Below, piece after piece: positions 8,926 through 55,667 of a stretch of 64,000 nt of DNA (the stretch's first letter is position 1; each line of letters starts with the position of its first letter). This stretch comes from Octopus sinensis. Lineage: Eukaryota. The stretch spans positions 98,518,001-98,582,000 of the forward strand of contig NC_043005.1 in NCBI RefSeq assembly GCF_006345805.1, read 5' to 3'. The notes below the pieces were generated by a model. It was not told the origin of the DNA. It saw only the letters and a program-made list of their open reading frames with translations, and did no database searches. A program made the translations under genes and the position numbers.

Positions 8926-10774
8926 AGTTGAGTTGTATTTCTGTTTGTTCCGGAGGATGAGAAAAAGAGAGAGAAGTGAGTGGGTGAGCATAGTGCAAGG
9001 AAAACCAGAGGTTTTGCTTCAGATTAAATATATATATATATGTACTATAGGGCAGCTTTTAAGCTAGCTCCTGTGGAGGGATCTTCATTAGGCCTTGGGC
9101 CCAACAATGACGCTTCATGCATTGAGTACATATTAAATTTTATTAAACTTGAACAATATTTTTCAAGCAATGAACAATTTTCATCAAAGCAATGATATAA
9201 TTTGTCAACTTGGAACTTATTGCAAAGCTGTATGATAAACAACAGTGCCACCACCATCGCCACCATATCTGCCATATACACCATTCAGACTTCTGATGCC
9301 ACCACTATCAATACCTTTGATTTCACTGTCTTCCCCTCCACTGCCATCACCTCTGTCTTTCACACTGCTTACTCTCACCATCATCCCTGACTGCCTTGGC
9401 TACCACCACCACCCACCACCACTGCCTCTGCCACTATCACAATTACAGCTCATATTATTACTACCACCCCATTACCATCATTGTTCAGTATGTTAGTCCA
9501 GCATGCTGGTTTAGTGTTCAGTCCCTCTTTCTCTCACATACCCACTCTTTCTCTCTCATCAACACCACTACTTTTAATAAAACATCTTCAACTCTGCCTA
9601 AATTTCTTTGTCTCTCTTTCTCTCCCTCTCTTTTTCTTTTTCACTCTGTCTCTCTATCTGTCTTCGCCACCACCCTCACCATCTTTATGACTACTACTAC
9701 TCTCATCCCAGCACAAGGAATAGTAGAAGTATCACTGAATAGTGAAATTGGGAGTCAAAGTGTGACACACTGACACACAGAAATTAGTTTCCACATTCAT
9801 TATATTAGATTTAACATCATCATTATTATCATCATCATCATCATGTGTGTGTGTGTAATTGTCTGAAAAGCAATGGCTTTTCAATTTTTTTTTATTGACT
9901 AGCAGACCTTATTTGACATGATCTGCTCAGAACTCATGCCATGACTATTGGGATGATTTCCAGGATATGAGAATATAGTATTGTATTTTTTTATTATTAC
10001 TTTTTTAATTCAGGTTTTGTTACTTGAGTCTTGCATACACAGTGGGCTTGCTGCCTGCAGCCTATGGTACCATGCTATCTGTTCTTTTTGACTATCTAAT
10101 ACTTTCCTAATAATTCTACAGGGCACTCACTCTATTCTGATTTCCTTTATATTCCTCTTGATGCCTCCTGATACTGTCCCCAAGGACCCAACAATAATTT
10201 GTGCTATCTTCTTCATTTTCCACAGTCAAACTATCTCATATTTAAGAGCATTGCATATGTCTATTTTTTTATCTTAATTTTTTACTATTTCTGTGTCAAA
10301 AGGGCATGCAACATCAGTTATAGAACACATGGGGGGTCACCTTGTCCATCACCACTAGGTCTAGCTTGTTTTCCTATCTGTTCGGATTTTGAAATCCTAC
10401 AGGATTTTGCAGATTCCTGACTCTGCCATTCTCTGCAGTTTGTGCTCATATCATATCTTGTCTCTCTCTAACCTCCACTTTTCATCAAGTTTCCAATGTA
10501 GCACTTTTGCTACCTGATTGTGTTGTCACAACTTGTATTGGTTTTGAGATGAATTTGTTCCAGGTGATGAGACGTTAGAGTATGACACAGAAGACAGAAA
10601 CAGGTGTCTTGCTATAGAGAAGATACATGATTGTCAGAGAGAGAGAGAGAGATGAGACATATATACTACTGAATAATTATGTGTGCATGTTTATAAAAAA
10701 GAATATGGAAACATAGAAACTGAAGTCTAAAAAAATGTAATTTAAATTAATCTAATTTATTTTCTCTTTCACAG

Positions 10775-10855
10775 GTAATATTGGTTGAAGTGAATGCTTT
10801 TCTCTCTTATCAAGACTCACATCTCAAAGTAACAATTGAATAACATTCTGGGCAG
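10775..10855 (+). other. Putative non-coding 5' exon of the 11571 gene
   Basis: CTAAT branch point at 10751, acceptor ttttctctttcacag, candidate donor GGCAG|GTGACA. Confidence 0.4.
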
Positions 10856-11570
10856 GTGACAGATACAGAATTTCATACCTGATTAGCCCATACAATATTC
10901 AAATATTGGAGCAGCCAACACTCAATGAAACCCACAATTTTTTTCTATCTGAATATAATAATCCAGTGATGGAGACAAGGAATGACTACACTGATAAATT
11001 TAATCATTAACTAGAAATACTCAGTAAAATCCCACAATTACTTCTATGTATACAACTATTTTATTTTAAAACATATATTGTCTTACAAAAACAGAAGTTA
11101 ATTTAATGAATACAATTAATTTAAGGAAAACAGAGAAAGCATGAAATCTGGGAGAAAATATCTTCAGTTGACTGAACCAAGGATATCAGAATATCTCTCT
11201 TACTCTGAAGTGGTGTAATATCATCCTTACCAGAGTAATATCGCCTTCATCTTCAAAACTTAGAAATACTATAATTTAATAGAAGAATTATGTTGCAATA
11301 GATATATGATTTCAAACAGAATTCACTGAGAATACACAACAACAACAGAAAAAGATAAAAGCAGCAATTATAATTAATGACATAATTTTCCATTGATTTT
11401 TAATTTCTTTTATTTGCCACAATTGCAAGATGTTTATAAAATAGAATGACACATTTGTTTTGGCATTTAAGACTTTTATAACAATAAAAATCGTAATAAT
11501 TTGGGATATTGTATTTATTTTCAAGCATTCATAAAGATTCTAGCTTTCATATTTCCTCCTCTATAGAAAA

Positions 11571-11906
11571 ATGCCACTCCTTCACCGGATTCTTCGAGAT
11601 AACATAGAAATGGCTGTATCTACATTATCATCTCTAAATCAAACTGTTCCTGTCGTTGGGAATGTAAACATACCAATCATACGGAATCTCAACAACTCAT
11701 CTACAGATTCAGGAATACTGAACACCTCTGTGGACAATTCCCTTACTTCAGGCCAGATTAAAATGAGTGAGTTACTAATCATCAAAGTAGTAGTACTCGT
11801 TGGTGTGGTTAGTATCTTGCTATTATCATCTTGCCGTTTTGTCTTTAAAATGTTTTCTCGTTACATAACGGACAGTAAAGATGACAGGGATCTTTCTTTT
11901 GGATAA
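11571..11906 (+). CDS. Uncharacterised 111-aa single-pass membrane protein
   Basis: Non-repetitive ORF. One hydrophobic span (LLIIKVVVLVGVVSILLLSSC) is followed by basic residues and preceded by N-glycosylation sequons. Pyrimidine-rich acceptor (ctttcatatttcctcctctatag) 4 nt before the ATG, and AATAAA near 12192. Confidence 0.65.
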   Translation: MPLLHRILRDNIEMAVSTLSSLNQTVPVVGNVNIPIIRNLNNSSTDSGILNTSVDNSLTSGQIKMSELLIIKVVVLVGVVSILLLSSCRFVFKMFSRYITDSKDDRDLSFG

Positions 11907-12402
11907 ATACTTTGCTCAGCATCCCATCACCATAGCCATTCCCAATATCACTGTAATACCCTTCTTCAATTTGACTGAACTTTTCAATAAATTCTCCAGA
12001 AGAAAAAAAGAAATAACTGGTTGAATATTTTCACAGAAAACTGACTGAAATATAAATATCTTCCTTATCCTTTCTAATTGCTTAGTTCTCAAGATTGTTT
12101 TCTGCTGCAGAAATAGAGACTAAATTTTAAATTAAAAGAAAAGTTTATGAAATATTCATTATTTTTTAAAGGATTTTATTCACAGTTTTGAAATAAATAA
12201 AGAAAATGCTTGAGTCTGATGTCTTGGTGGATTATGTATGAGCAGTTCAATGTACAAAATATTTTATTTAAAAAGCAAAATCATGGTAATGCTAAAATTT
12301 CATTCAAAGCAAGTTGAGAAAGCACGTTTTTCTTAGTATATGATGTTTAAGTGTAAATATGTATAGGTCCATTGTATAATTGTGTGTGTGTGTGTGTGTG
12401 TG

Positions 12403-12715
12403 TAGTGAAGACTCATGGCTTAGTGGTTAAGATATTTGGCCCATGTTTGTAAGGTTGTGAGTTCAATTCCCAGCAATGTGTTGGTCCTTGAGCAAGATAC
12501 TTAATTTCATATTGCTCCAGTCCACTCAGCTGGTAAAAATGAGTAGAACCTATATTTCAAAGGGCCAGCCATGTCACATTGAATCTCCTTGAGAACTACG
12601 TTAAGGATACATGTCTGTGGAGCACTCAGCCACTTGCATGATAATTTCTCAAACAGGCTGTTCTGTTCATCAGATCAACTGGAACCCTTGTCATTGTAAC
12701 CGTCAGAGTACCAGT
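12403..12715 (+). mobile_element. tRNA-derived SINE with CORE/Meta-like central domain (family E)
   Basis: A/B-box-like head plus gtccttgagcaagatacttaatttc...ctccagtccactcagctg. Second copy at 48490-48780. Confidence 0.7.
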
Positions 12716-19360: not shown

Positions 19361-21648
19361 CTTCTGGTTGAAATATCTAACAGGAATGTACAAAAAGCTG
19401 GCTGAAAACTTTAACAACATACTAGCAGAGCCAGAGACAATGCCAGAATGGCTCACGAAGGAGTAAACCATTATAATTCCCAAATCAAATGAGACAGCAA
19501 AACCTGAAAACTACAGACCTATAACCTGTCTCCCTACAATGTACAAGGCATTTACTGCAGTGATATCGCAGAGATTGAACAAGCACCTGGACAAAAACAA
19601 CCTGTTTCCAGAAGAGCAGAAAGGATGCCGCAAAGGCTCATATGGCTGTAAAGATCAACTAATGATCAATAAAGCCATAACTGAAGACAGCCACAGAAAG
19701 AAGAAAAGCCTCAGTATGGCCTGGATCGACTACAAAAAGGCGTTTGATAGCATCCCCCACACATGGATCCTCGAAACACTAGCCATTAACAAAGTAGCAC
19801 CAACAATTCATAGGACACTCTATGAATAAATGGCAAACAGTGCTACAGCTCCAAACAAAAGAGGGACTCATGAAAACCAAAGCCATCCCCATTAGAAGAG
19901 GAATATTCCAGGGAGACATGCTCTCTCCACTCCTTTTCTGCTTGGCACTGTCACCTCTGTCTGATATGCTAAATAGAACTGGATGTGGATATAAATGTTA
20001 CAGCAAAACGATCAGCCACCTTTTATAAATGGATGACCTAAAACTATACGCTGCAAATGATAAACAGCTGGAAACACTATTAAAGACAGTTCATGGATTT
20101 ACCAAAGAAATAGATATGAAATTTGGATTAGAAAAATACGCCAAAGTAACCCTGAAACTAGTTAAGAGTAGCAACATCACACTAGATAAAACCAATAAAA
20201 TAAAAGAATTAGACCAAAGCCAAACTTACAAATACTTAGGAATCCATGAACTAGATAAGACACAACACACACAAATGAAAGAGAAGATAAAAAAAGAATA
20301 TTATAGACGAGTTAGATCAATACTAAAAACAGAGCTCAATGCTAAAAACAAGATAATAGGTATTAACACTTTAGCTGTCCCAGTTATATGTTACAGCTAC
20401 AATATTCTTAACTGGACACTAAATGAACTGACCAAAATAGATAGGAAAGCAAGAAAAATAATGACAGGATCTAGGATGCATCACCCAAAATCTGACATAG
20501 AAAGACTATATATACAATGTATAGAAGGTGGTAGCGGCCTTATACAGCTGGAAAACTACTATAAAATAACCACCATAGGACTGCAAAAATATCTACTTCA
20601 GAAGGAAGGAAAACTGATACAAATAGCGGCAAAACACAAGCAAAACAAAAAACTGTTCTCAGTATTTAAGGAAGCTGACAAATACAAACAAGAAATCATA
20701 CCACCTAATAAATATGAAGAAAAAGAAGAAGAAGATGAAGAAACAACAAAAGCTATAAAACAAATGAAATCCAAACTAAAACTAGAACAGCAAAGAACCA
20801 TGATAAAACGATGGCAAGAAAAGCCCCTTCATGGTAAATACTGGACTAAACTAAATGCAAAAGAAATAGACAAAGAAAAATCCCAATAATGGTTGAGAAG
20901 CTCAGGACTCAAAGCAGAGACAGAGGGATTTTTAATTGCAGCACAAGACTAAAGCCTCCCCACCAGAAATTACCAAAAACATGTAATGAAAAGAAATATA
21001 ACAAGTAACTGCAGAATATGTGGAGATGGACAAGAAACAATAAATCATATTATCTCTGGCTGCCCAGTCCTGGCTAAGAAGGAATATATTCACAGACATG
21101 ACAGAGTTGGGACGAACATACACTGGAAGCTATGCCAACATTATGGAATAACAACAGAAAAAAGATGGTATAGGCACACACCAGAAAAGGTCACAGAAAA
21201 CAAGATGCCGATACACAGATAAAGAAATTAAGGCCAACAGACCAGATATAGTTGTCAGAGATCATGAAGGAAAAAAATACTTTCTAATTGATGTATCAAT
21301 ACCAGAAGATGACAACGTGTCTCTAAAAGAAATGGAGAAACTTTCAAAATACAAAGACCTGGAAATAGAGGTAACCAGAATGTGGAATCTAAAAACAGAA
21401 ACAATTCCTATCATAGTAGGTGCATTAGGCATTATAAAAAAATATTCAGACAAATACATAACAAAAACACCAGGACTTACAAACATATAACATACAGAAA
21501 ATTGCACTACTAGGCACTGCACACATCCTATGCAGAACACTTTCCATACAATAACCATCAGAGCATCACAACAAATCACAGCACATACCCAAGGCACACA
21601 GAGCTGCGCTCGGTAGTGAAGTGAAAGCACGCTATAAAAATAAAACTA

Positions 21649-24649: not shown

Positions 24650-26202
24650 GATTTACCAAAGAAATAGATATGAAATTTGGATTAGAAAAATACGCCAAAG
24701 TAACCCTGAAACTAGTTAAGAGTAGCAACATCACACTAGATAAAACCAATAAAATAAAAGAATTAGACCAAAGCCAAACTTACAAATACTTAGGAATCCA
24801 TGAACTAGATAAGACACAACACACACAAATGAAAGAGAAGATAAAAAAAGAATATTATAGACGATTTAGATCAATACTAAAAACAGAGCTCAATGCTAAA
24901 AACAAGATAATAGGTATTAACACTTTAGCTGTCCCAGTTATATGTTACAGCTACAATATTCTTAACTGGACACTAAATGAACTGACCAAAATAGATAGGA
25001 AAGCAAGAAAAATAATGACAGGATCTAGGATGCATCACCCAAAATCTGACATAGAAAGACTATATATACAATGTATAGAAGGTGGTAGCGGCCTTATACA
25101 GCTGGAAAACTACTATAAAATAACCACCATAGGACTGCAAAAATATCTACTTCAGAAGGAAGGAAAACTGATACAAATAGCGGCAAAACACAAGCAAAAC
25201 AAAAAACTGTTCTCAGTATTTAAGGAAGCTGACAAATACAAACAAGAAATCATACCACCTAATAAATATGAAGAAAAAGAAGAAGAAGATGAAGAAAAAC
25301 AAAAGCTATAAAACAAATGAAATCCAAACTAAAACTAGAACAGCAAAGAACCATGATAAAACGATGGCAAGAAAAGCCCCTTCATGGTAAATACTGGACT
25401 AAACTAAATGCAAAAGAAATAGACAAAGAAAAATCCCAATAATGGTTGAGAAGCTCAGGACTCAAAGCAGAGACAGAGGGATTTTTAATTGCAGCACAAG
25501 ACTAAAGCCTCCCCACCAGAAATTACCAAAAACATGTAATGAAAAGAAATATAACAAGTAACTGTAGAATATGTGGAGATGGACAAGAAACAATAAATCA
25601 TATTATCTCTGGCTGCCCAATCCTGGCTAAGAAGGAATATATTCACAGACATGACAGAGTTGGGACGAACATACACTGGAAGCTATGCCAACATTATGGA
25701 ATAACAACAGAAAAAAGATGGTATAGGCACACACCAGAAAAGGTCACAGAAAACAAGATGCCGATACACAGATAAAGAAATTAAGGCCAACAGACCAGAT
25801 ATAGTTGTCAGAGATCATGAAGGAAAAAAAAGCTTTCTAATTGATGTATCAATACCAGAAGATGACAACGTGTCTAAAAGAAATGGAGAAACTTTCAAAA
25901 TACAAAGACCTGGAAATAGAGGTAACCAGAATGTGGAATCTAAAAACAGAAACAATTCCTATCATAGTAGGTGCATTAGGTATGATAAAAAAATATTCAG
26001 ACAAATACATAACAAAAACACCAGGACTTACAAACACATATAACATACAGAAAATTGCACTACTAGGCACTGCACACATCCTATGCAGAACACTTTCCAT
26101 ACAATAACCATCAGAGCATCACAACAAATCACAGCACAAACCCAAGGCACACAGAGCTGCGCTCGGTAGTGAAGTGAAAGGACGCTATAAAAATTAAAAC
26201 TA

Positions 26203-43548: not shown

Positions 43549-44376
43549 TCACTATTTTGGGAGGAGAAACCCAGCGTCCACCTACTCCCTCCACAACACT
43601 ATTCTCAAAAAGTCTTCATGTGAACGTGACCTGGGTGTTATTGTCGACAGTGATTTGCGTTGGACAAAACAATTCGCTAAAATTGCCAAGAAGGCTGAGG
43701 GTATCTTGGCATCACTCACCAAATCCTTTGTAAGCCGCTCTCCAACTATCTATTTGCGACTTTATATAGCTATGGTAAGACCTCACCTGGAATTTGCATC
43801 ACCAGTCTGGAACCCCTATCTTGCCCAGGATATCAATCGTCTGGAAGCCGTTCAGCGACGTGCAACCAAGAGAATACCCGCCATCAGGCATTTGCCATAT
43901 CCTCAACGCCTTACTTCCCTGGGGATGGACACATTGAAACTCCGACGTCTGGCAGGTGACTTGGCAGACACCCATAAAATTATCAACCATCGTACAAACA
44001 ATAACTCTGAGCACCTTTTCAAACTCCACCTATCTAACACCCGTGGACATATTTACAAAGTCAGAAAACAGCACAGCTCCCATGACTTTCGGAAACATTT
44101 TTTCACGCTGAGAGTTGCTGAAGCATGGAACAAACTGCCAGCATCAGTTGTTAGTTGTCGGAGCACTGCATCCTTCAAAACTTCCATGCTTTCTGAGATT
44201 CGCCAACACTACACCTGATTTTCTCCCCTCCATACACACACAAGCATGTATCTGACTCATGCATTGTTTGCTTTCCAGACATTTGTACATTACTGCATAT
44301 ACTCTGACAAGTTGTGGTGCACCTGAGCACTGTATATAATAATTTCATTATTATTATTATTATTATTATAATTATT
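43549..44376 (+). mobile_element. CR1-type LINE 3' fragment with (TTA)n tail
   Basis: ERDLGVIVDSDL...MVRPHLEFASPVWNPYL...LEAVQRRAT...WNKLP (ORF 43655-44218). Confidence 0.92.
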
Positions 44377-51892: not shown

Positions 51893-52029
51893 CTGAAATT
51901 GTTAAAAATGGTTTATTTAGTATTTTATGTAATGTAGTATTTGTCTTCTTCTTTTCTTATTGGTCATTCCTTGAGAAATGAACTGCATTCCTGGTCTTCA
52001 TAGGCCCTCTGAGACAAGTGAGATTGGGG

Positions 52030-53420
52030 CCATTAATGTTTTATTAAACAGCTGCGTTTTGAGGGAAGTGAGAGAAACATATGTAACAAAAGAATTCCAA
52101 AGGGTTGATCTTCTTAGGACAGGCTGGATATAGTGGTTTGTGTGGAGCCTGGGGATGGGGGTGCATAATTTGGGCAATGGTAAGACAGGAGGCAAGTGAG
52201 TCAAGAATACCTGAGAGGAGAGAAGATGAGACTAGGAACAGAGGCGACAACAGTAGCAGTAGAAAAAGCAGAAAGAAGAGACAACATTTCTGCTAGTCTG
52301 AGACTCAAATATTTGTGTGTAATTTCAAACCTAAATCACATTTAATCACTTTACAAGCCTTTTTTGGATGTAAACTAGGATGTCTGAGTGTATAGCAGCA
52401 GCATAACCGATGTAGGAGGAATATTCCATTGTGAGTCTCAAATGATCTTTAGAGAGGGTCAGTAGTTACTGTGGAGCAGAAGTATTTTCTGAGTCTGAAG
52501 GAGTTCAGTCTTTGAGATGCTAACTTTGTAATGCCGAAGGTGTGTGTTTACCAGCAACGATCCTCGGTTATAATAAGGCTTGTCAATTTCAAGTGATCAT
52601 GTGGGTTTTATTTGCATGTTGTTCATGTTTAGGGAGGGAGAGATGCGATAATGTCTTCTTGATAACGTTAGTGATTGGGTCTTTTTGCTGTCACAGGAGA
52701 CAAGATTTGAATGACCGCATTGAAGGATAATTTTGAAGTTTTTATTTGTGGACTAAATGTAGATGTGGCAAGAGATGCTTAAGTTGCATGTGAATGATAC
52801 TAGTGTGTGGAAAGATAGACGGGAATGAATGGTAGTACCATTTGTGATGGAGCATGCATTGCTGAGGATGATGATAAGCATGTCATTGATGTATAGGAGG
52901 AAAAAAATGGAAGACAAAACTGAACCATGGACCACACCAGAATTGATAGAGTGTAGGTCAAGGAGAGTTTCATCAGCACATGCCATGATAGTACAAGTTG
53001 ACAGGAAGTGATCAATCCAACAGATGGAGCTCCTGCCAGACAGGGTTGAAAGCTTTGCAAATGTTGAAGGGTAACAATAGTACTTTCACCAAATTTTTTC
53101 AAGGGCAAGAGTCCATTGATAAGTGACATAGGAGTGTGTGTCTCCTGTAGATTTGGCTTTACAAAAGCTGTACTGGTGTTCATTAAAGGAGACAGATTTG
53201 AGATGATGGAAAAAGTTGTTAATGGATTGTCTCTCCTTTTGGAGATGTCGGGTGATAAGCTGGGTCAGTGGGATTGCACTTTTTAGAAATGGGACATACT
53301 GTAGCATATTTCTAAAAACTGAGATATATTTCTGTGGAAAAAACAGAATGTGAAGAGTTTGGTGAGAATAGGTACTTGCTCTGGGGCACATTGTTTGAGG
53401 ATAATAGCAGGATATTTTAA
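52030..53420 (-). mobile_element. Degenerate CR1/L2-group RT region
   Basis: Remnants INSGVVHGSVLSSIFFLLYIND, HQYSFCKAKSTGD and STLWNS. Confidence 0.7.
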
Positions 53421-55667
53421 AGGCTGGTGACCTTATTAGTTTTGAGCAAGCAGAGGTACTTTCACACTTTAATGCAGTGGAAAGGAATAGATGGAGAGGA
53501 GATTTACCTTGTGGGTGCAGTGTGGAGTGGGATACAAAATGGGAAGAAAAGGAGAAGCAGTGCTCAAGATTTGTGTGGATTCTCCTAGACAGTTTAATAA
53601 TAAGCTTATACTTATATTTATACATACAGTAAACTTTGTATAAGTTAAAGTCTTGATTCTAAACATCTAATTTAGGGATGTGTGTGTGTGTGTGTGCGCA
53701 TGTGCATACGCATGTGTGTGTAAGTATATGGCATTATAAACCAACTGGAGATTAGAAGGATGAAAATGTGATGCCAAACACAAAGATATCAAAGTCAGAT
53801 TTAATAACAAGGAAAATTTCAAATTTAATCAACTTTGCATTATGTTGTTATTGTTTTTACTCTTTCAGTATTTGATTTCATTCACAATCTATGATGTCCA
53901 AATATTTTTCTAAGGACTTCAGCAATGTGAGTAGAATTCAAGGAAATGTTAAGGGAGCATATAATGGTTTCTTATGCTAGCATAAGGCCAAGTTACGTAG
54001 GAAGGAGGACACCGTGGAAAGATGAAAGACAAAGCTGATTGAAATTTGAACTCAGAGGGTCTGAGCATGTTTAGCCCTTTGCTCTCTTTTCCTCGTGAAA
54101 TTAGTGCAATAAAAAAATGCTGATTATTTACAATTAATACAAGAGACTAGAGGAGTTGATTAAATCAACTTCAATATACCCCAAGTATTTATTTTATTGA
54201 CCTTAGAGGGATGGAAGACAATGTTAGACAAGGATAAATTTGAACTCAGAACATAAAGGACAACACTAAACAATGAAAACCATTTCTTCTACTGTTTCTG
54301 TTGCTGCATATTTTTTTTTATGGTGATGATAATAATTATTGCATTTGCAACAAGGGTGATGGATGAGAGGAAAGACTGTAATGACAAATTGCAAAGAAGT
54401 GCAGATTTTTGCAGAATCAATCATGAAAGAGATATACATGGAAAACAGTATACAAAAAAATGAAATGTGACAGCCCAATAGGGGGATTACCACCTAAGGG
54501 CCAATCAAAGAAGCTTACAGAACCTGGATTATCTGAACTACTGTGATGATCTCTGGCCTCCAGACATGTTCTGAAATTAAGGCTATTTACACAATCAGTT
54601 CATATCAATCTCACCCAGAAGTCTTTAAATGGTTACAATAGCAATAAATTCTCAAATCACACCCTACTATCTTAGATAGGGACACATTAGATAATGTGCA
54701 TTTGAGTTCCCTGTACAAAGGAAAAACAGGACGACAATGATCACGGGATGTTGGAATGCCGAGGACTGCTTATTTAGAGATGAGCTAGGGCTAAATGACA
54801 ACAGTGTTTCAGCCAGTCCACTGGAGGGCTGCAACTTCCTTGCTTTCCACTTCAAGTAGATGTTGAAATTAACGAAGGCTTGGCTGAAGAGCAAAGTATC
54901 TTTCCTCTGGTCTTTCAGTCATGTTCACTGTACAGTTTTTTTCACCATGGCCACCAGACAGGATAAAACTAGCTGCACTTCTTGGCCAAAGACAGTAAGT
55001 TGCTTCTAATGTTGAACATGGACACAGGCAAGGTTGGGTGGTTAAGAAGTTCACTTCACAATCATGAAATCCTAAGTTTAATCCCACTCCATAACATCTT
55101 GGGCAAGTGTCTATTCTATAAGCTCAGGTTGACCCAAGTCTCTTTGAGTGAATCTAGAAGGATGGAAACTGAGTAGAAGCCAGGTGGAAGGATTGCATCC
55201 GAAATTCAAGGATCCAACCATATCAAATTGTTATGCTGATTCAGCTTGGGAACTATGTTAAGAGTACATGGGTTTGTGGATTTACTCAGTCAATTACACA
55301 TCGATTTATTGAGCCAGACGTTCAGTTGATCAAACAACTGAATACTTGCTACTGAAGCTTCCAGTGGATCCATCACATATGACAACAGCAGTTCACTGTA
55401 ACATCACAAGTCACCAGTGATCAGACACTGATTACAAGCATGCAGAATGGTTCCATTGCTCTGCACACAACACAAATAGAATGGACTGACAGTACTTCAA
55501 TACCTGTAAGTTTATTCCAAACTGACAATGTTCTCTGTAGCACTAGCAGAGATTTCTGAAAGTTTTTTAAAGCCCTGGGATGAATATCTTCTTCAGCAGG
55601 GAAGAGCTGATGCTTAGTCCTTCCCTAAGAACATTGATGCTCTTATTCAATCAATAATCCTCTACAG

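What the first reader, a model, noticed from the sequence alone, without database searches (positions are those of the whole stretch)
11571..11906. Orphan single-pass membrane microprotein gene
Seen: a 111-aa ORF in a repeat-free island, with its own acceptor 4 nt upstream. There is no signal peptide. The Asn/Ser/Thr-rich N-terminus has sequons NQT, NNS, NSS and NTS. One TM span ends in Cys, followed by RFVFKMFSR (positive-inside) and a short acidic tail. Established: this N-out type III layout with a single coding exon is typical of small regulators such as KCNE, Reprimo or cortexin. Inference: an uncharacterised mollusc/cephalopod channel- or receptor-accessory subunit. I recognise no homologue and claim only architectural similarity.
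Basis: partly seen in the sequence, partly recalled or inferred. Interest (0 to 1): 0.7.

Follow-up and report, generated by a model that had tools for sequence, protein, structure and literature searches.

The report
Conserved small membrane glycoprotein gene, not orphan
The 111-codon reading frame is a real, intron-free octopus gene for a small single-pass membrane glycoprotein, but it is not an orphan: it belongs to an unnamed, unstudied protein family also found in bivalves, an annelid and probably a lamprey.

Summary
The window is Octopus vulgaris, and the protein is already deposited without a name.

ORF length alone proves nothing, since about 1.3 such ORFs are expected per window. Conservation does. 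A related octopus genome has the same 111-codon frame with no indel, while its flanks have 18. dN/dS is 0.21. In the membrane span and tail, all 10 substitutions are synonymous (P about 1e-5).

"Orphan" is refuted. An exhaustive HMMER search and profile searches recover about 75 small proteins with the same build. Named members come from Owenia fusiformis, Sinanodonta woodiana, Dreissena polymorpha and Lampetra planeri, all labelled "hypothetical". None reaches any Pfam threshold, none matches a PDB chain, and hhalign does not support cortexin or KCNE.

The conserved start motif (MPLCHRIL in relatives, MPLLHRIL here), an in-frame stop 11 codons upstream and intron-free coding sequences elsewhere show the coding sequence is complete.

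Sequon excess and a strong positive-inside bias support an N-out, C-in topology. Invariant K72, V75, L76 and V79 lie on one helix face. This suggests, but does not show, that the protein works through helix packing with a partner, as an accessory subunit would.

The parts
11571..11906 (+). Complete intron-free coding sequence (111 aa plus TAA) of a small single-pass membrane glycoprotein. It is already present as an unnamed protein in NCBI nr and UniRef for Octopus vulgaris.
   Evidence: ORF. Exact match to a gene on OX597823.1 of GCA_951406725.2. Orthologue P0001 is 90% identical with no indel and dN/dS 0.21. Family homologues.
11571..11768 (+). N-terminal ectodomain (aa 1-66). It is predicted disordered and evolves fast. 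It begins with MPLLHRIL, the octopus version of the family start motif MPxC[HKR]R[IL]L, in which the family Cys4 is replaced by Leu.
   Evidence: dN/dS is 0.73, indistinguishable from neutral. AF2 pLDDT is 50-55 with no secondary structure for aa 1-58. The MPxC start occurs in 35 of 75 relatives.
11637..11645 (+). Sequon NQT (aa 23-25).
   Evidence: It is conserved in the orthologue.
11691..11702 (+). Overlapping sequons NNS and NSS (aa 41-44).
   Evidence: They are conserved in the orthologue.
11721..11729 (+). Sequon NTS (aa 51-53).
   Evidence: It is conserved in the orthologue. Across the family, 278 sequons are observed against 103 expected.
11769..11834 (+). Transmembrane helix (aa 67-88, ELLIIKVVVLVGVVSILLLSSC). 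It carries the family-invariant K72 (11784-11786), V75, L76 and V79, the near-invariant L83 and S86, and C88 (11832-11834).
   Evidence: Hydropathy. AF2 helix 59-101 with pLDDT up to 95. Invariant columns. Helical periodicity of conservation, permutation p 0.007. All substitutions against the orthologue are synonymous.
11835..11903 (+). Cytosolic part (aa 89-111): a basic juxtamembrane helix RFVFKMFSRY (family motif [KR]xVF[KR]TFS[RK]Y) followed by the acidic tail DSKDDRDLSFG.
   Evidence: Positive-inside bias is 3.8 against 0.93 K+R in 74 of 76 family members. No amino-acid change against the orthologue.
11545..11566 (+). Candidate 3' splice site (pyrimidine-rich tract plus AG) 4 nt before the ATG. 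If used, it would mean a 5'-UTR intron. No RNA evidence was available.
   Evidence: Sequence. The AG and part of the tract are conserved in the related octopus, and an AG lies 2 nt before the ATG in relative L006. This is an inference only.
11986..11991 (+). AATAAA, 80 nt after the stop codon, a candidate polyadenylation signal. A second AATAAA lies at 12192-12197.
   Evidence: The first is conserved in the related octopus contig L002. The second is changed to AATAAAG context but still present as AAATAAAG.
10775..12398 (+). Block colinear with contigs of a related octopus genome. It evolves at roughly the neutral rate outside the ORF (12% substitutions, 18 indel events). The ORF inside it has 7.7% substitutions and no indels.

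Best explanation
Window 11571-11906 (+) is the complete, intron-free coding sequence of a real Octopus vulgaris gene.

Its 111-aa product belongs to an unnamed, uncharacterised family of small single-pass membrane proteins. The family is found in cephalopods, bivalves and annelids, and probably in lampreys.

Shown or strongly supported:
- The protein has a short, disordered N-terminal segment rich in sequons.
- It has one extremely conserved transmembrane helix, with an invariant Lys near its outer end and a conserved face (K72, V75/L76, V79, L83, S86).
- A conserved Cys lies at the inner end of that helix.
- A basic helix RFVFKMFSRY and an acidic tail follow.
- Charge bias and sequon excess place the N-terminus outside (lumenal) and the C-terminus in the cytosol. 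Because there is no signal peptide, the transmembrane helix would act as a reverse signal-anchor (type III).

Inferred:
- Selection acts almost only on the transmembrane and juxtamembrane helix, not on the ectodomain. The protein therefore most likely works through helix-helix packing in the membrane with a conserved multi-pass partner such as a channel, transporter or receptor. That would make it a small accessory or regulatory subunit.
- K72 would pair with a polar or acidic group of the partner.
- C88 would be S-acylated.
- The glycans would serve folding or trafficking rather than recognition.

Confidence differs by layer: about 0.9 that this is a real coding gene of this family, about 0.75 for the N-out/C-in topology, and about 0.4 for the accessory-subunit mechanism.
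For: Identity of the window: the ORF's exact product is a called gene on OX597823.1 of GCA_951406725.2 and is in NCBI nr and UniRef. That assembly is the O. vulgaris reference.

Purifying selection: orthologue P0001 is 111 aa and 90% identical, on contigs colinear with window 10723-12398.
- The ORF has 0 indels against 18 indel events in 1246 flank nt (P about 0.008).
- dN/dS is 0.21, with 11 of 26 changes nonsynonymous against 18.7 expected (P about 0.0009).
- Codons 67-111 have 10 synonymous and 0 nonsynonymous changes (P about 1e-5).

Family:
- phmmer against 1.84 billion representatives gives 40 hits at E<=1e-3. P0003 is the best, at 6.8e-15 over the full length.
- Profile searches add more.
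- K72, V75, L76 and V79 are invariant, and L83, S86 and C88 nearly so.
- Named members come from Owenia, Sinanodonta, Dreissena and Lampetra.
- hhalign of the family against the lamprey protein gives probability 98% and E 6e-14.

Complete coding sequence: the start motif MPxC[HKR]R[IL]L sits at residue 1 in 30 relatives. An in-frame stop lies upstream. The coding sequences of relatives L002, L005, L006 and L007 are uninterrupted.

Topology:
- 278 sequons are observed against 103 expected in the N-terminal regions.
- K+R is 3.8 after the helix against 0.93 before it, in 74 of 76 members.
- One subfamily carries an N-terminal hydrophobic, signal-peptide-like segment, which implies the same orientation.

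Structure: AF2 predicts a single helix, aa 59-101, with pLDDT up to 95 and the rest disordered.

Interface: conservation within aa 70-88 has helical periodicity, permutation p 0.007.
Against: - No transcript, ribosome-profiling or proteomic evidence could be examined. Transcription is only suggested, by the existence of a deposited gene model from a pipeline that uses Iso-Seq and RNA-seq.
- No orthologous protein from the RefSeq annotations of other Octopus species appeared in the 90% cluster.
- The species behind the orthologous contigs (SRR11869384, SRR11869391, SRR11869394) is unknown.
- The octopus protein has lost the family's Cys4.
- The accessory-subunit mechanism has no direct support: there is no partner, no co-evolution test and no expression pattern.
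- Nearly the whole helix is conserved, so the "one face" argument is modest. The periodicity is not significant for the wider windows aa 67-90 or 60-101.
- The lamprey link rests on 31 aligned residues of a hydrophobic helix. The lamprey protein lacks sequons and the FSRY motif.
Confidence: 0.6

Rival explanations
1. Chance ORF in AT-rich non-coding DNA. Under this view the deposited gene model is an annotation artefact.
For: ORFs of this length are expected by chance, at 1.27 per simulated window. No Pfam domain is found. No transcript data were seen.
Against: The frame is preserved without indels in a related genome whose flanks carry 18 indel events. Codons 67-111 show 10 synonymous and 0 nonsynonymous changes (P about 1e-5). 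The best homologue has E 6.8e-15, and about 75 family members share invariant residues and the same start motif.
Confidence: 0.02
2. Not a stand-alone gene. Either the ORF is the last coding exon of a larger multi-exon coding sequence, or it is a downstream cistron in the long 3' exon of the annotated 80-aa gene. That gene's coding part ends at 10788 on the same strand.
For: A splice-acceptor-like site lies 4 nt before the ATG. The upstream gene's terminal exon starts at 10775 on the same strand only 783 nt away, and the whole stretch 10775-12398 is colinear in the related octopus.
Against: Reading in from upstream is blocked by an in-frame TAG 11 codons before the ATG. The first residues MPLLHRIL match the residue-1 motif MPLCHRIL of relatives in other phyla. 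Relatives have uninterrupted coding sequences of similar length. The public annotation lists the two as separate genes. A shared transcript (bicistronic, or a mis-called upstream ORF) is not excluded and would not change the protein.
Confidence: 0.12
3. A lineage-restricted (cephalopod or mollusc) orphan or de novo gene.
For: The first word-indexed search found only one 90% cluster. There is no Pfam family. None of the relatives carries a functional name.
Against: The exhaustive HMMER search and the profile searches find relatives in Annelida (Owenia), Bivalvia (Sinanodonta, Dreissena) and probably Cyclostomata (Lampetra), with invariant residues.
Confidence: 0.01
4. A short sialomucin-like surface glycoprotein, comparable to SMAGP, CD164/MGC-24 or ECSCR. 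Its function would lie in the glycosylated ectodomain (adhesion, anti-adhesion or a protective coat), with the helix serving only as an anchor.
For: The ectodomain is rich in sequons and Ser/Thr throughout the family. There are weak sub-threshold Pfam hits to ECSCR (8 of 39 members), MGC-24 and TMEM154.
Against: The ectodomain is short, unalignable across the family and evolves neutrally between the two octopuses (dN/dS 0.73). The anchor is the most conserved part, with invariant K, V, L and V, which a passive anchor would not need. The Pfam hits cover only the hydrophobic helix, at 13.9 bits against a cut-off of 27.
Confidence: 0.12
5. A self-associating helix that forms a homo-oligomeric pore or membrane-organising bundle (viroporin-like or phospholemman-like), rather than binding a different partner.
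For: A conserved polar stripe (K72, S86, then S/T87) lies on one helix face. One member has a sub-threshold hit to the coronavirus E family, E 2e-4. Cys4 in most relatives could form an intermolecular disulfide.
Against: The single Pfam hit is sub-threshold and confined to a hydrophobic segment. No oligomer modelling or assay was possible. Octopus lacks Cys4. Nothing separates self-association from partner binding with the present data.
Confidence: 0.1

Closest known systems
Unnamed family of hypothetical proteins: Owenia fusiformis CAH1788895.1 (UniRef A0A8J1Y343), Sinanodonta woodiana KAL3831895.1, Dreissena polymorpha DPMN_063409, and an unnamed Lampetra planeri protein
   Same: These proteins are 50-190 aa and have intron-free coding sequences. 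Many start with MPxC. They have a sequon-rich N-terminal region, the core motif E-L-Q-L-I-K-x-I-V-L-V-V-V-V-x-I-L-L-L-S-T-C-[KR]-x-V-F-[KR]-T-F-S-[RK]-Y, and a short acidic tail. The octopus protein has every invariant residue.
   Different: Octopus has Leu in place of the family's Cys4, and a longer tail ending in LSFG. That tail is shared only with its closest relatives P0003, P0029 and P0033. No member has a described function, a Pfam model or a structure.
KCNE / MinK potassium-channel accessory subunits (Pfam ISK_Channel)
   Same: From general knowledge, these are also small, N-out, single-pass proteins with an N-glycosylated N-terminus, no cleaved signal peptide and a single coding exon. 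They act through transmembrane helix contacts with a channel.
   Different: No sequence relationship was found. There is no Pfam hit for the ORF at E<=10 or among 39 relatives.
Cortexin (Pfam PF11057)
   Same: Size and layout are similar. There is a faint resemblance around the inner end of the helix: LL..C.[KR]....[FY]SR.
   Different: Only 1 of 39 relatives hits the Pfam model, at E 0.075. Cortexin lacks the invariant Lys and the V-L-x-x-V motif.
ECSCR, endothelial cell-specific chemotaxis regulator (Pfam PF15820), and sialomucins CD164/MGC-24
   Same: These are single-pass glycoproteins with a Val-rich helix followed by basic residues. Eight of 39 relatives give weak hits to ECSCR.
   Different: The hits are 13.9 bits against a cut-off of 27 and cover only profile positions 21-51, the hydrophobic helix. 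ECSCR and CD164 have signal peptides and long mucin domains (general knowledge).

Membership tests
Unnamed MPxC / LIK-x2-VL-x2-V / STC / FSRY family (defined here) | Invariant Lys, Val-Leu and Val in the transmembrane helix (K72, V75, L76, V79), and Cys at its inner end (C88) | tested here: met
   All are present in the window protein. The columns are invariant or at least 98% conserved in 65 non-identical sequences.
Unnamed MPxC / LIK-x2-VL-x2-V / STC / FSRY family | Basic juxtamembrane motif [KR]xVF[KR]xFS[RK]Y followed by a short acidic tail | tested here: met
   The window protein has RFVFKMFSRY followed by ITDSKDDRDLSFG.
Unnamed MPxC / LIK-x2-VL-x2-V / STC / FSRY family | Sequon-rich, otherwise unconserved N-terminal region of about 40-120 aa | tested here: met
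   The window protein has 4 sequons against 1.9 expected. The family has 278 against 103.
Unnamed MPxC / LIK-x2-VL-x2-V / STC / FSRY family | Start motif M-P-x-C-[HKR]-R-[IL]-L at residue 1 (present in about half of the members) | tested here: inconclusive
   O. vulgaris has MPLLHRIL and the related octopus has MSLVHRIL. The motif is recognisable but the Cys is replaced.
Unnamed MPxC / LIK-x2-VL-x2-V / STC / FSRY family | Statistically significant sequence similarity to members from other phyla | tested here: met
   phmmer against P0003 gives E 6.8e-15 in a library of 1.84 billion proteins. Pairwise BLASTP gives 7e-9 against Sinanodonta and 6e-6 against Owenia.
Unnamed MPxC / LIK-x2-VL-x2-V / STC / FSRY family | Coding sequence in one exon | tested here: met
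   The gene range equals 3 x aa + 3 in the window and in L002, L005, L006 and L007.
KCNE (Pfam ISK_Channel) | Match to the family profile | tested here: not met
   No hit at E<=10 for the ORF, and none among the families hit by 39 relatives. hhalign probability is 0.1%.
KCNE (Pfam ISK_Channel) | Physical and functional association with a Kv channel | not testable with these tools
   This needs co-expression electrophysiology or co-purification.
Cortexin (PF11057) | Match to the family profile at the gathering score | tested here: not met
   One of 39 relatives hits at E 0.075. hhalign probability is 4.8%.
ECSCR (PF15820) | Match to the family profile at the gathering score (27 bits) beyond the hydrophobic helix | tested here: not met
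   The best score is 13.9 bits, covering profile positions 21-51 only. The window protein itself has no hit.
Type III (N-out, signal-anchor) single-pass membrane proteins (a topological class, not a homology family) | No cleavable signal peptide, one transmembrane helix, positive-inside charge bias with the C-terminus cytosolic, and an N-terminal domain that is translocated and glycosylated | tested here: inconclusive
   The sequence criteria are met. There is a single hydrophobic segment, K+R of 3.8 inside against 0.93 outside in 74 of 76 members, and sequon excess. Actual glycosylation and orientation need experiments.

The most novel reading that the evidence does not exclude
The octopus gene is one member of an ancient, bilaterian-wide family of type III single-pass glycoproteins that has never been described. 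Its almost invariant transmembrane helix, with a membrane-embedded Lys, would be an obligate auxiliary subunit of an equally conserved channel, transporter or receptor complex. That would be a new class of accessory subunit, missed so far because the genes are tiny, intron-free and usually unannotated.
Probability: 0.3. Interest if true: 0.6.

Novelty: new variant of a known kind. Interest (0 to 1): 0.4.

Why it matters
Small single-pass membrane proteins are routinely missed or left as "hypothetical", yet several known ones (KCNE, FXYD, the regulins, MRAP) set the properties of major channels, pumps and receptors.

This finding turns a supposed octopus orphan into a handle on a conserved family. 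The family's constraint pattern is unusual: an invariant helix with a buried Lys, next to a freely evolving glycosylated ectodomain. That pattern points to a specific partner within the membrane.

The family could be given a profile model straight away, so that members are annotated across invertebrate genomes. Finding the partner would be a tractable experiment. For the octopus genome itself, the result is modest: an existing unnamed gene model is confirmed and placed in a family.

Tried and rejected
- **Pfam scans.** The ORF has no hit at E<=10. Among 39 relatives there are only sub-threshold, helix-only hits to ECSCR, MGC-24, TMEM154, CoV_E and cortexin, which I rejected as compositional.
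- **PDB.** A profile search found nothing at E<=1.
- **First homology search.** The word-indexed search found only the 90% cluster and would have wrongly supported "orphan". The exhaustive HMMER search overturned that.
- **False positives.** P0004 (2277 aa) and P0008 (1940 aa) are tandem-repeat proteins in which a weak 15-residue match is summed 7 to 12 times. I rejected them as homologues.
- **Core-only profile at E<=10.** This was meant to find named gnathostome homologues. It returned only short family members plus the Dreissena protein, and no jawed-vertebrate member.
- **Source species.** I tried to identify the species behind SRR11869384/391/394, SRR6517992, GCA_022702835, GCA_013332915/975 and the ENA metagenome records through full-text paper searches. 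Only the O. vulgaris and lamprey assemblies were resolved.
- **Literature on named members.** Searches for their accessions found no paper.
- **Are contigs L002-L004 transcripts?** They end in a (GT)n run, a poly-G run or a T-run, and they include intron-like sequence upstream of the annotated acceptor at 10775. They look genomic and give no evidence of transcription.
- **hhalign against human cortexin-1 and KCNE1.** Probabilities were 4.8% and 0.1%.
- **tRNA and Rfam scans of the window.** Nothing was found.
- **Structure-library search.** I skipped it, because a lone helix gives meaningless matches.
Full report
**1. What is at the coordinates**

The + strand carries an ATG at 11571 and a TAA at 11904-11906, giving 111 codons. 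The frame is closed by a TAG 11 codons upstream of the ATG. An AG at 11565-11566, preceded by a pyrimidine-rich tract, lies 4 nt before the ATG.

The product is MPLLHRILRDNIEMAVSTLSSLNQTVPVVGNVNIPIIRNLNNSSTDSGILNTSVDNSLTSGQIKMSELLIIKVVVLVGVVSILLLSSCRFVFKMFSRYITDSKDDRDLSFG. It contains the sequons NQT, NNS, NSS and NTS. It has a single strongly hydrophobic segment (best 19-mer aa 68-86, mean Kyte-Doolittle 2.9). Cys88 is followed by RFVFKMFSR and an acidic tail.

No repeat of note overlaps the ORF, and there is no paralogue elsewhere in the window.

**2. Is it more than chance?**

By length, no. The window is 33-42% G+C, and first-order Markov simulations give on average 1.27 ATG-ORFs of at least 111 aa per 64 kb. 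The case has to rest on conservation.

**3. Where the window comes from**

The exact protein is a called gene on OX597823.1 of GCA_951406725.2, and it is present without a name in NCBI nr and UniRef. That assembly is the chromosome-level Octopus vulgaris reference (PMC10700109). Its annotation combined Iso-Seq and RNA-seq transcript assemblies, protein alignments and ab initio predictions. So a public gene model already exists. It carries no function.

**4. Conservation in a second octopus genome**

One 90%-identical 111-aa protein (P0001) was found on five short Logan contigs from runs SRR11869384, SRR11869391 and SRR11869394. These contigs are colinear with window 10723-12398. They end in microsatellite, poly-G or T-runs, so they look like genomic DNA of a related species that I could not identify.

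- The flanks differ at 12% of sites and carry 18 indel events in 1246 aligned nt. The ORF differs at 7.7% and has none (P about 0.008).
- Nei-Gojobori dN/dS is 0.21. Eleven of 26 substitutions are nonsynonymous, against 18.7 expected (P about 0.0009).
- The signal is concentrated. Codons 67-111 (membrane span and tail) have 10 synonymous and 0 nonsynonymous changes (P about 1e-5). Codons 1-66 have dN/dS 0.73, indistinguishable from neutral.
- The two out-of-frame readings do not show this pattern.

This is a protein-coding sequence under purifying selection.

**5. It is not an orphan**

An exhaustive phmmer search of 1.84 billion representative proteins returned 40 hits at E<=1e-3. The best is P0003: 114 aa, 45% identical over the full length, E 6.8e-15. 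It shares the octopus-specific tail (...SSCRFVLKLFSRYIVVGKDERDISFE).

The others are 47-190 aa proteins that all carry the same core, roughly LNELQLIKxIVLVVVVxILLLSTC[KR]xVF[KR]TFS[RK]Y, followed by a short acidic tail. Two long hits (P0004, P0008) are tandem-repeat artefacts.

Profile searches added about 35 more members. The named members are:
- Owenia fusiformis CAH1788895.1 (annelid)
- Sinanodonta woodiana KAL3831895.1 and Dreissena polymorpha DPMN_063409 (bivalves)
- an unnamed Lampetra planeri protein

All are "hypothetical", "uncharacterized" or "unnamed". Many others come from metagenome or read-archive contigs whose host I could not determine.

Pairwise BLASTP of the octopus protein gives 7e-9 against the Sinanodonta protein and 6e-6 against the Owenia protein. 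The lamprey protein aligns to the family profile with hhalign probability 98% and E 6e-14. However, this covers only 31 residues of the helix, and the protein lacks sequons and the FSRY motif. I call the vertebrate link probable, not certain.

**6. The coding sequence is complete**

Thirty relatives begin with M-P-x-C at residue 1, and five more have it just inside. It is typically MPLC[HKR]R[IL]L, for example MPLCHRIL in P0033. The octopus MPLLHRIL is the same motif with Cys4 replaced by Leu, and the related octopus has MSLVHRIL.

Three things rule out the ORF being the tail of a larger coding sequence: this conserved start motif, the upstream in-frame stop, and the uninterrupted coding sequences of relatives in four other loci.

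What remains open is the transcript. The annotated 80-aa gene on the same strand has its last coding exon at 10775-10788 (cacag|GTAATATTGGTTGA), only 783 nt upstream. The ORF might therefore share a long terminal exon with it, be spliced from a non-coding exon into the AG at 11566, or have its own start. AATAAA signals at 11986 and 12192 lie downstream, and the first is conserved in the related octopus.

**7. Anatomy and topology**

AlphaFold2, run with the family alignment, predicts one continuous helix at aa 59-101 (pLDDT up to 95) and disorder elsewhere.

Across 76 family sequences, the 15 residues before the helix carry 0.93 K+R and 2.64 D+E. The 15 residues after the conserved Cys carry 3.8 K+R and 0.82 D+E. 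The bias has the same sign in 74 of 76.

The N-terminal regions contain 278 N-x-S/T sequons, against 103 expected from composition-matched shuffles. Five members of one subfamily have an N-terminal hydrophobic segment that looks like a signal peptide, which would give the same orientation.

By the positive-inside rule, together with the fact that sequons are only used in the lumen, this supports an N-out, C-in layout. The octopus protein has no signal peptide, so this would be a type III (reverse signal-anchor) insertion. This is an inference from sequence. Glycosylation itself was not shown.

**8. Where the constraint lies, and the likely mechanism**

In 65 non-identical sequences, K72, V75, L76 and V79 are invariant, and L83, S86 and C88 nearly so. 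F92, F95 and S96 are strongly conserved. The ectodomain cannot be aligned. Within aa 70-88 the conservation has alpha-helical periodicity (permutation p 0.007). The periodicity is not significant for wider windows, because almost everything is conserved.

A passive membrane anchor does not need an invariant Lys five residues into the helix, or an invariant V-L-x-x-V. My preferred reading is therefore that the helix and the basic juxtamembrane segment form a specific protein-protein interface in the membrane. On this reading:
- the protein is a small accessory or regulatory subunit of a conserved multi-pass partner;
- K72 contacts a polar or acidic group of that partner;
- C88 is a candidate S-acylation site;
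- the glycosylated ectodomain serves folding or trafficking.

It remains inferred, and I put it at roughly 0.4.

The rivals are self-association into a bundle or pore, and a sialomucin-like function centred on the ectodomain. The neutral evolution of the ectodomain argues against the second.

**9. Comparison with known families**

- **KCNE, cortexin, Reprimo.** Their single-coding-exon, N-out layout is general knowledge and was not tested here.
- **Membership tests fail.** No Pfam family reaches its threshold for the ORF or for any of 39 relatives.
- **ECSCR.** The commonest weak hit is ECSCR, at 13.9 bits against a cut-off of 27, and it covers only the hydrophobic helix.
- **Structures and literature.** No PDB chain matches. 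No paper in the searchable library mentions the accessions of the named members.

The protein is therefore a member of a real but undescribed family. In kind, it is a small single-pass membrane glycoprotein.

**10. Verdict**

- "Orphan" is refuted.
- The stand-alone single-coding-exon gene is confirmed at the level of the coding sequence.
- The accessory-subunit function is plausible but untested.
- Novelty is moderate. The octopus gene model already exists, but the family it belongs to, and the unusual conservation of its helix, appear not to have been described.

Noticed in passing
window 10775-10788 (+): This is the terminal coding exon (cacag|GTAATATTGGTTGA) of an annotated multi-exon gene with an 80-aa product. 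The gene spans more than 9 kb upstream on the same strand and ends 783 nt before the ORF. The acceptor and the short coding end are conserved in the related octopus contig. Whether this exon continues into a transcript that also carries the 111-aa ORF is unresolved.
   Followed up: partly
window 12381-12480 (+); also 35717, 50146 (-), 61772: A (GT)n microsatellite at 12381-12402 is followed directly by a tRNA-derived SINE-like element. Its B-box-like motif GGTTGTGAGTTCAATTCCC occurs 4 times in the window (up to 3 mismatches) against 0 expected. ARAGORN and Rfam report nothing. The microsatellite is where the related-species contigs end.
   Followed up: partly
window 20029-20889 and 24670-25311 (+): Two nearly identical long ORFs (286 and 213 aa) lie 4.6 kb apart. 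They carry the C-terminal remnant of a reverse transcriptase (RVT_1, 18.8 bits, below the cut-off). They look like two copies of one retroelement. A further retroelement-like ORF at 43655-44218 has no Pfam hit.
   Followed up: partly
between window 11248 and 11268 (L002 580-875): The related octopus genome has an insertion of about 276 nt, rich in T-runs, upstream of the ORF. It is absent from O. vulgaris. Two of the three contigs break inside it.
   Followed up: no
relatives P0045, P0050, P0064, P0065, P0071: Several family members have C-terminal extensions of 70-120 aa beyond the point where their close relatives stop (for example ...RPDHL* against ...RPDHLWVMMV...). This suggests stop-codon loss or read-through gene calls in some taxa.
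   Followed up: no
relatives P0032, P0037, P0055, P0067, P0069: One subfamily (core ...STCTF[IV][FL]RT...) has an N-terminal hydrophobic segment that looks like a signal peptide instead of the MPxC start. The family therefore appears to include both signal-peptide (type I) and signal-anchor (type III) members with the same final orientation.
   Followed up: partly
L007/L008 downstream of the lamprey gene (3463 onward): The lamprey homologue is followed immediately by a long, imperfect tandem array of (CAGAGACACA)-like units.
   Followed up: no
window 52001-54000: This 2-kb bin has a strong local GC skew of +0.34, far above the rest of the window.
   Followed up: no
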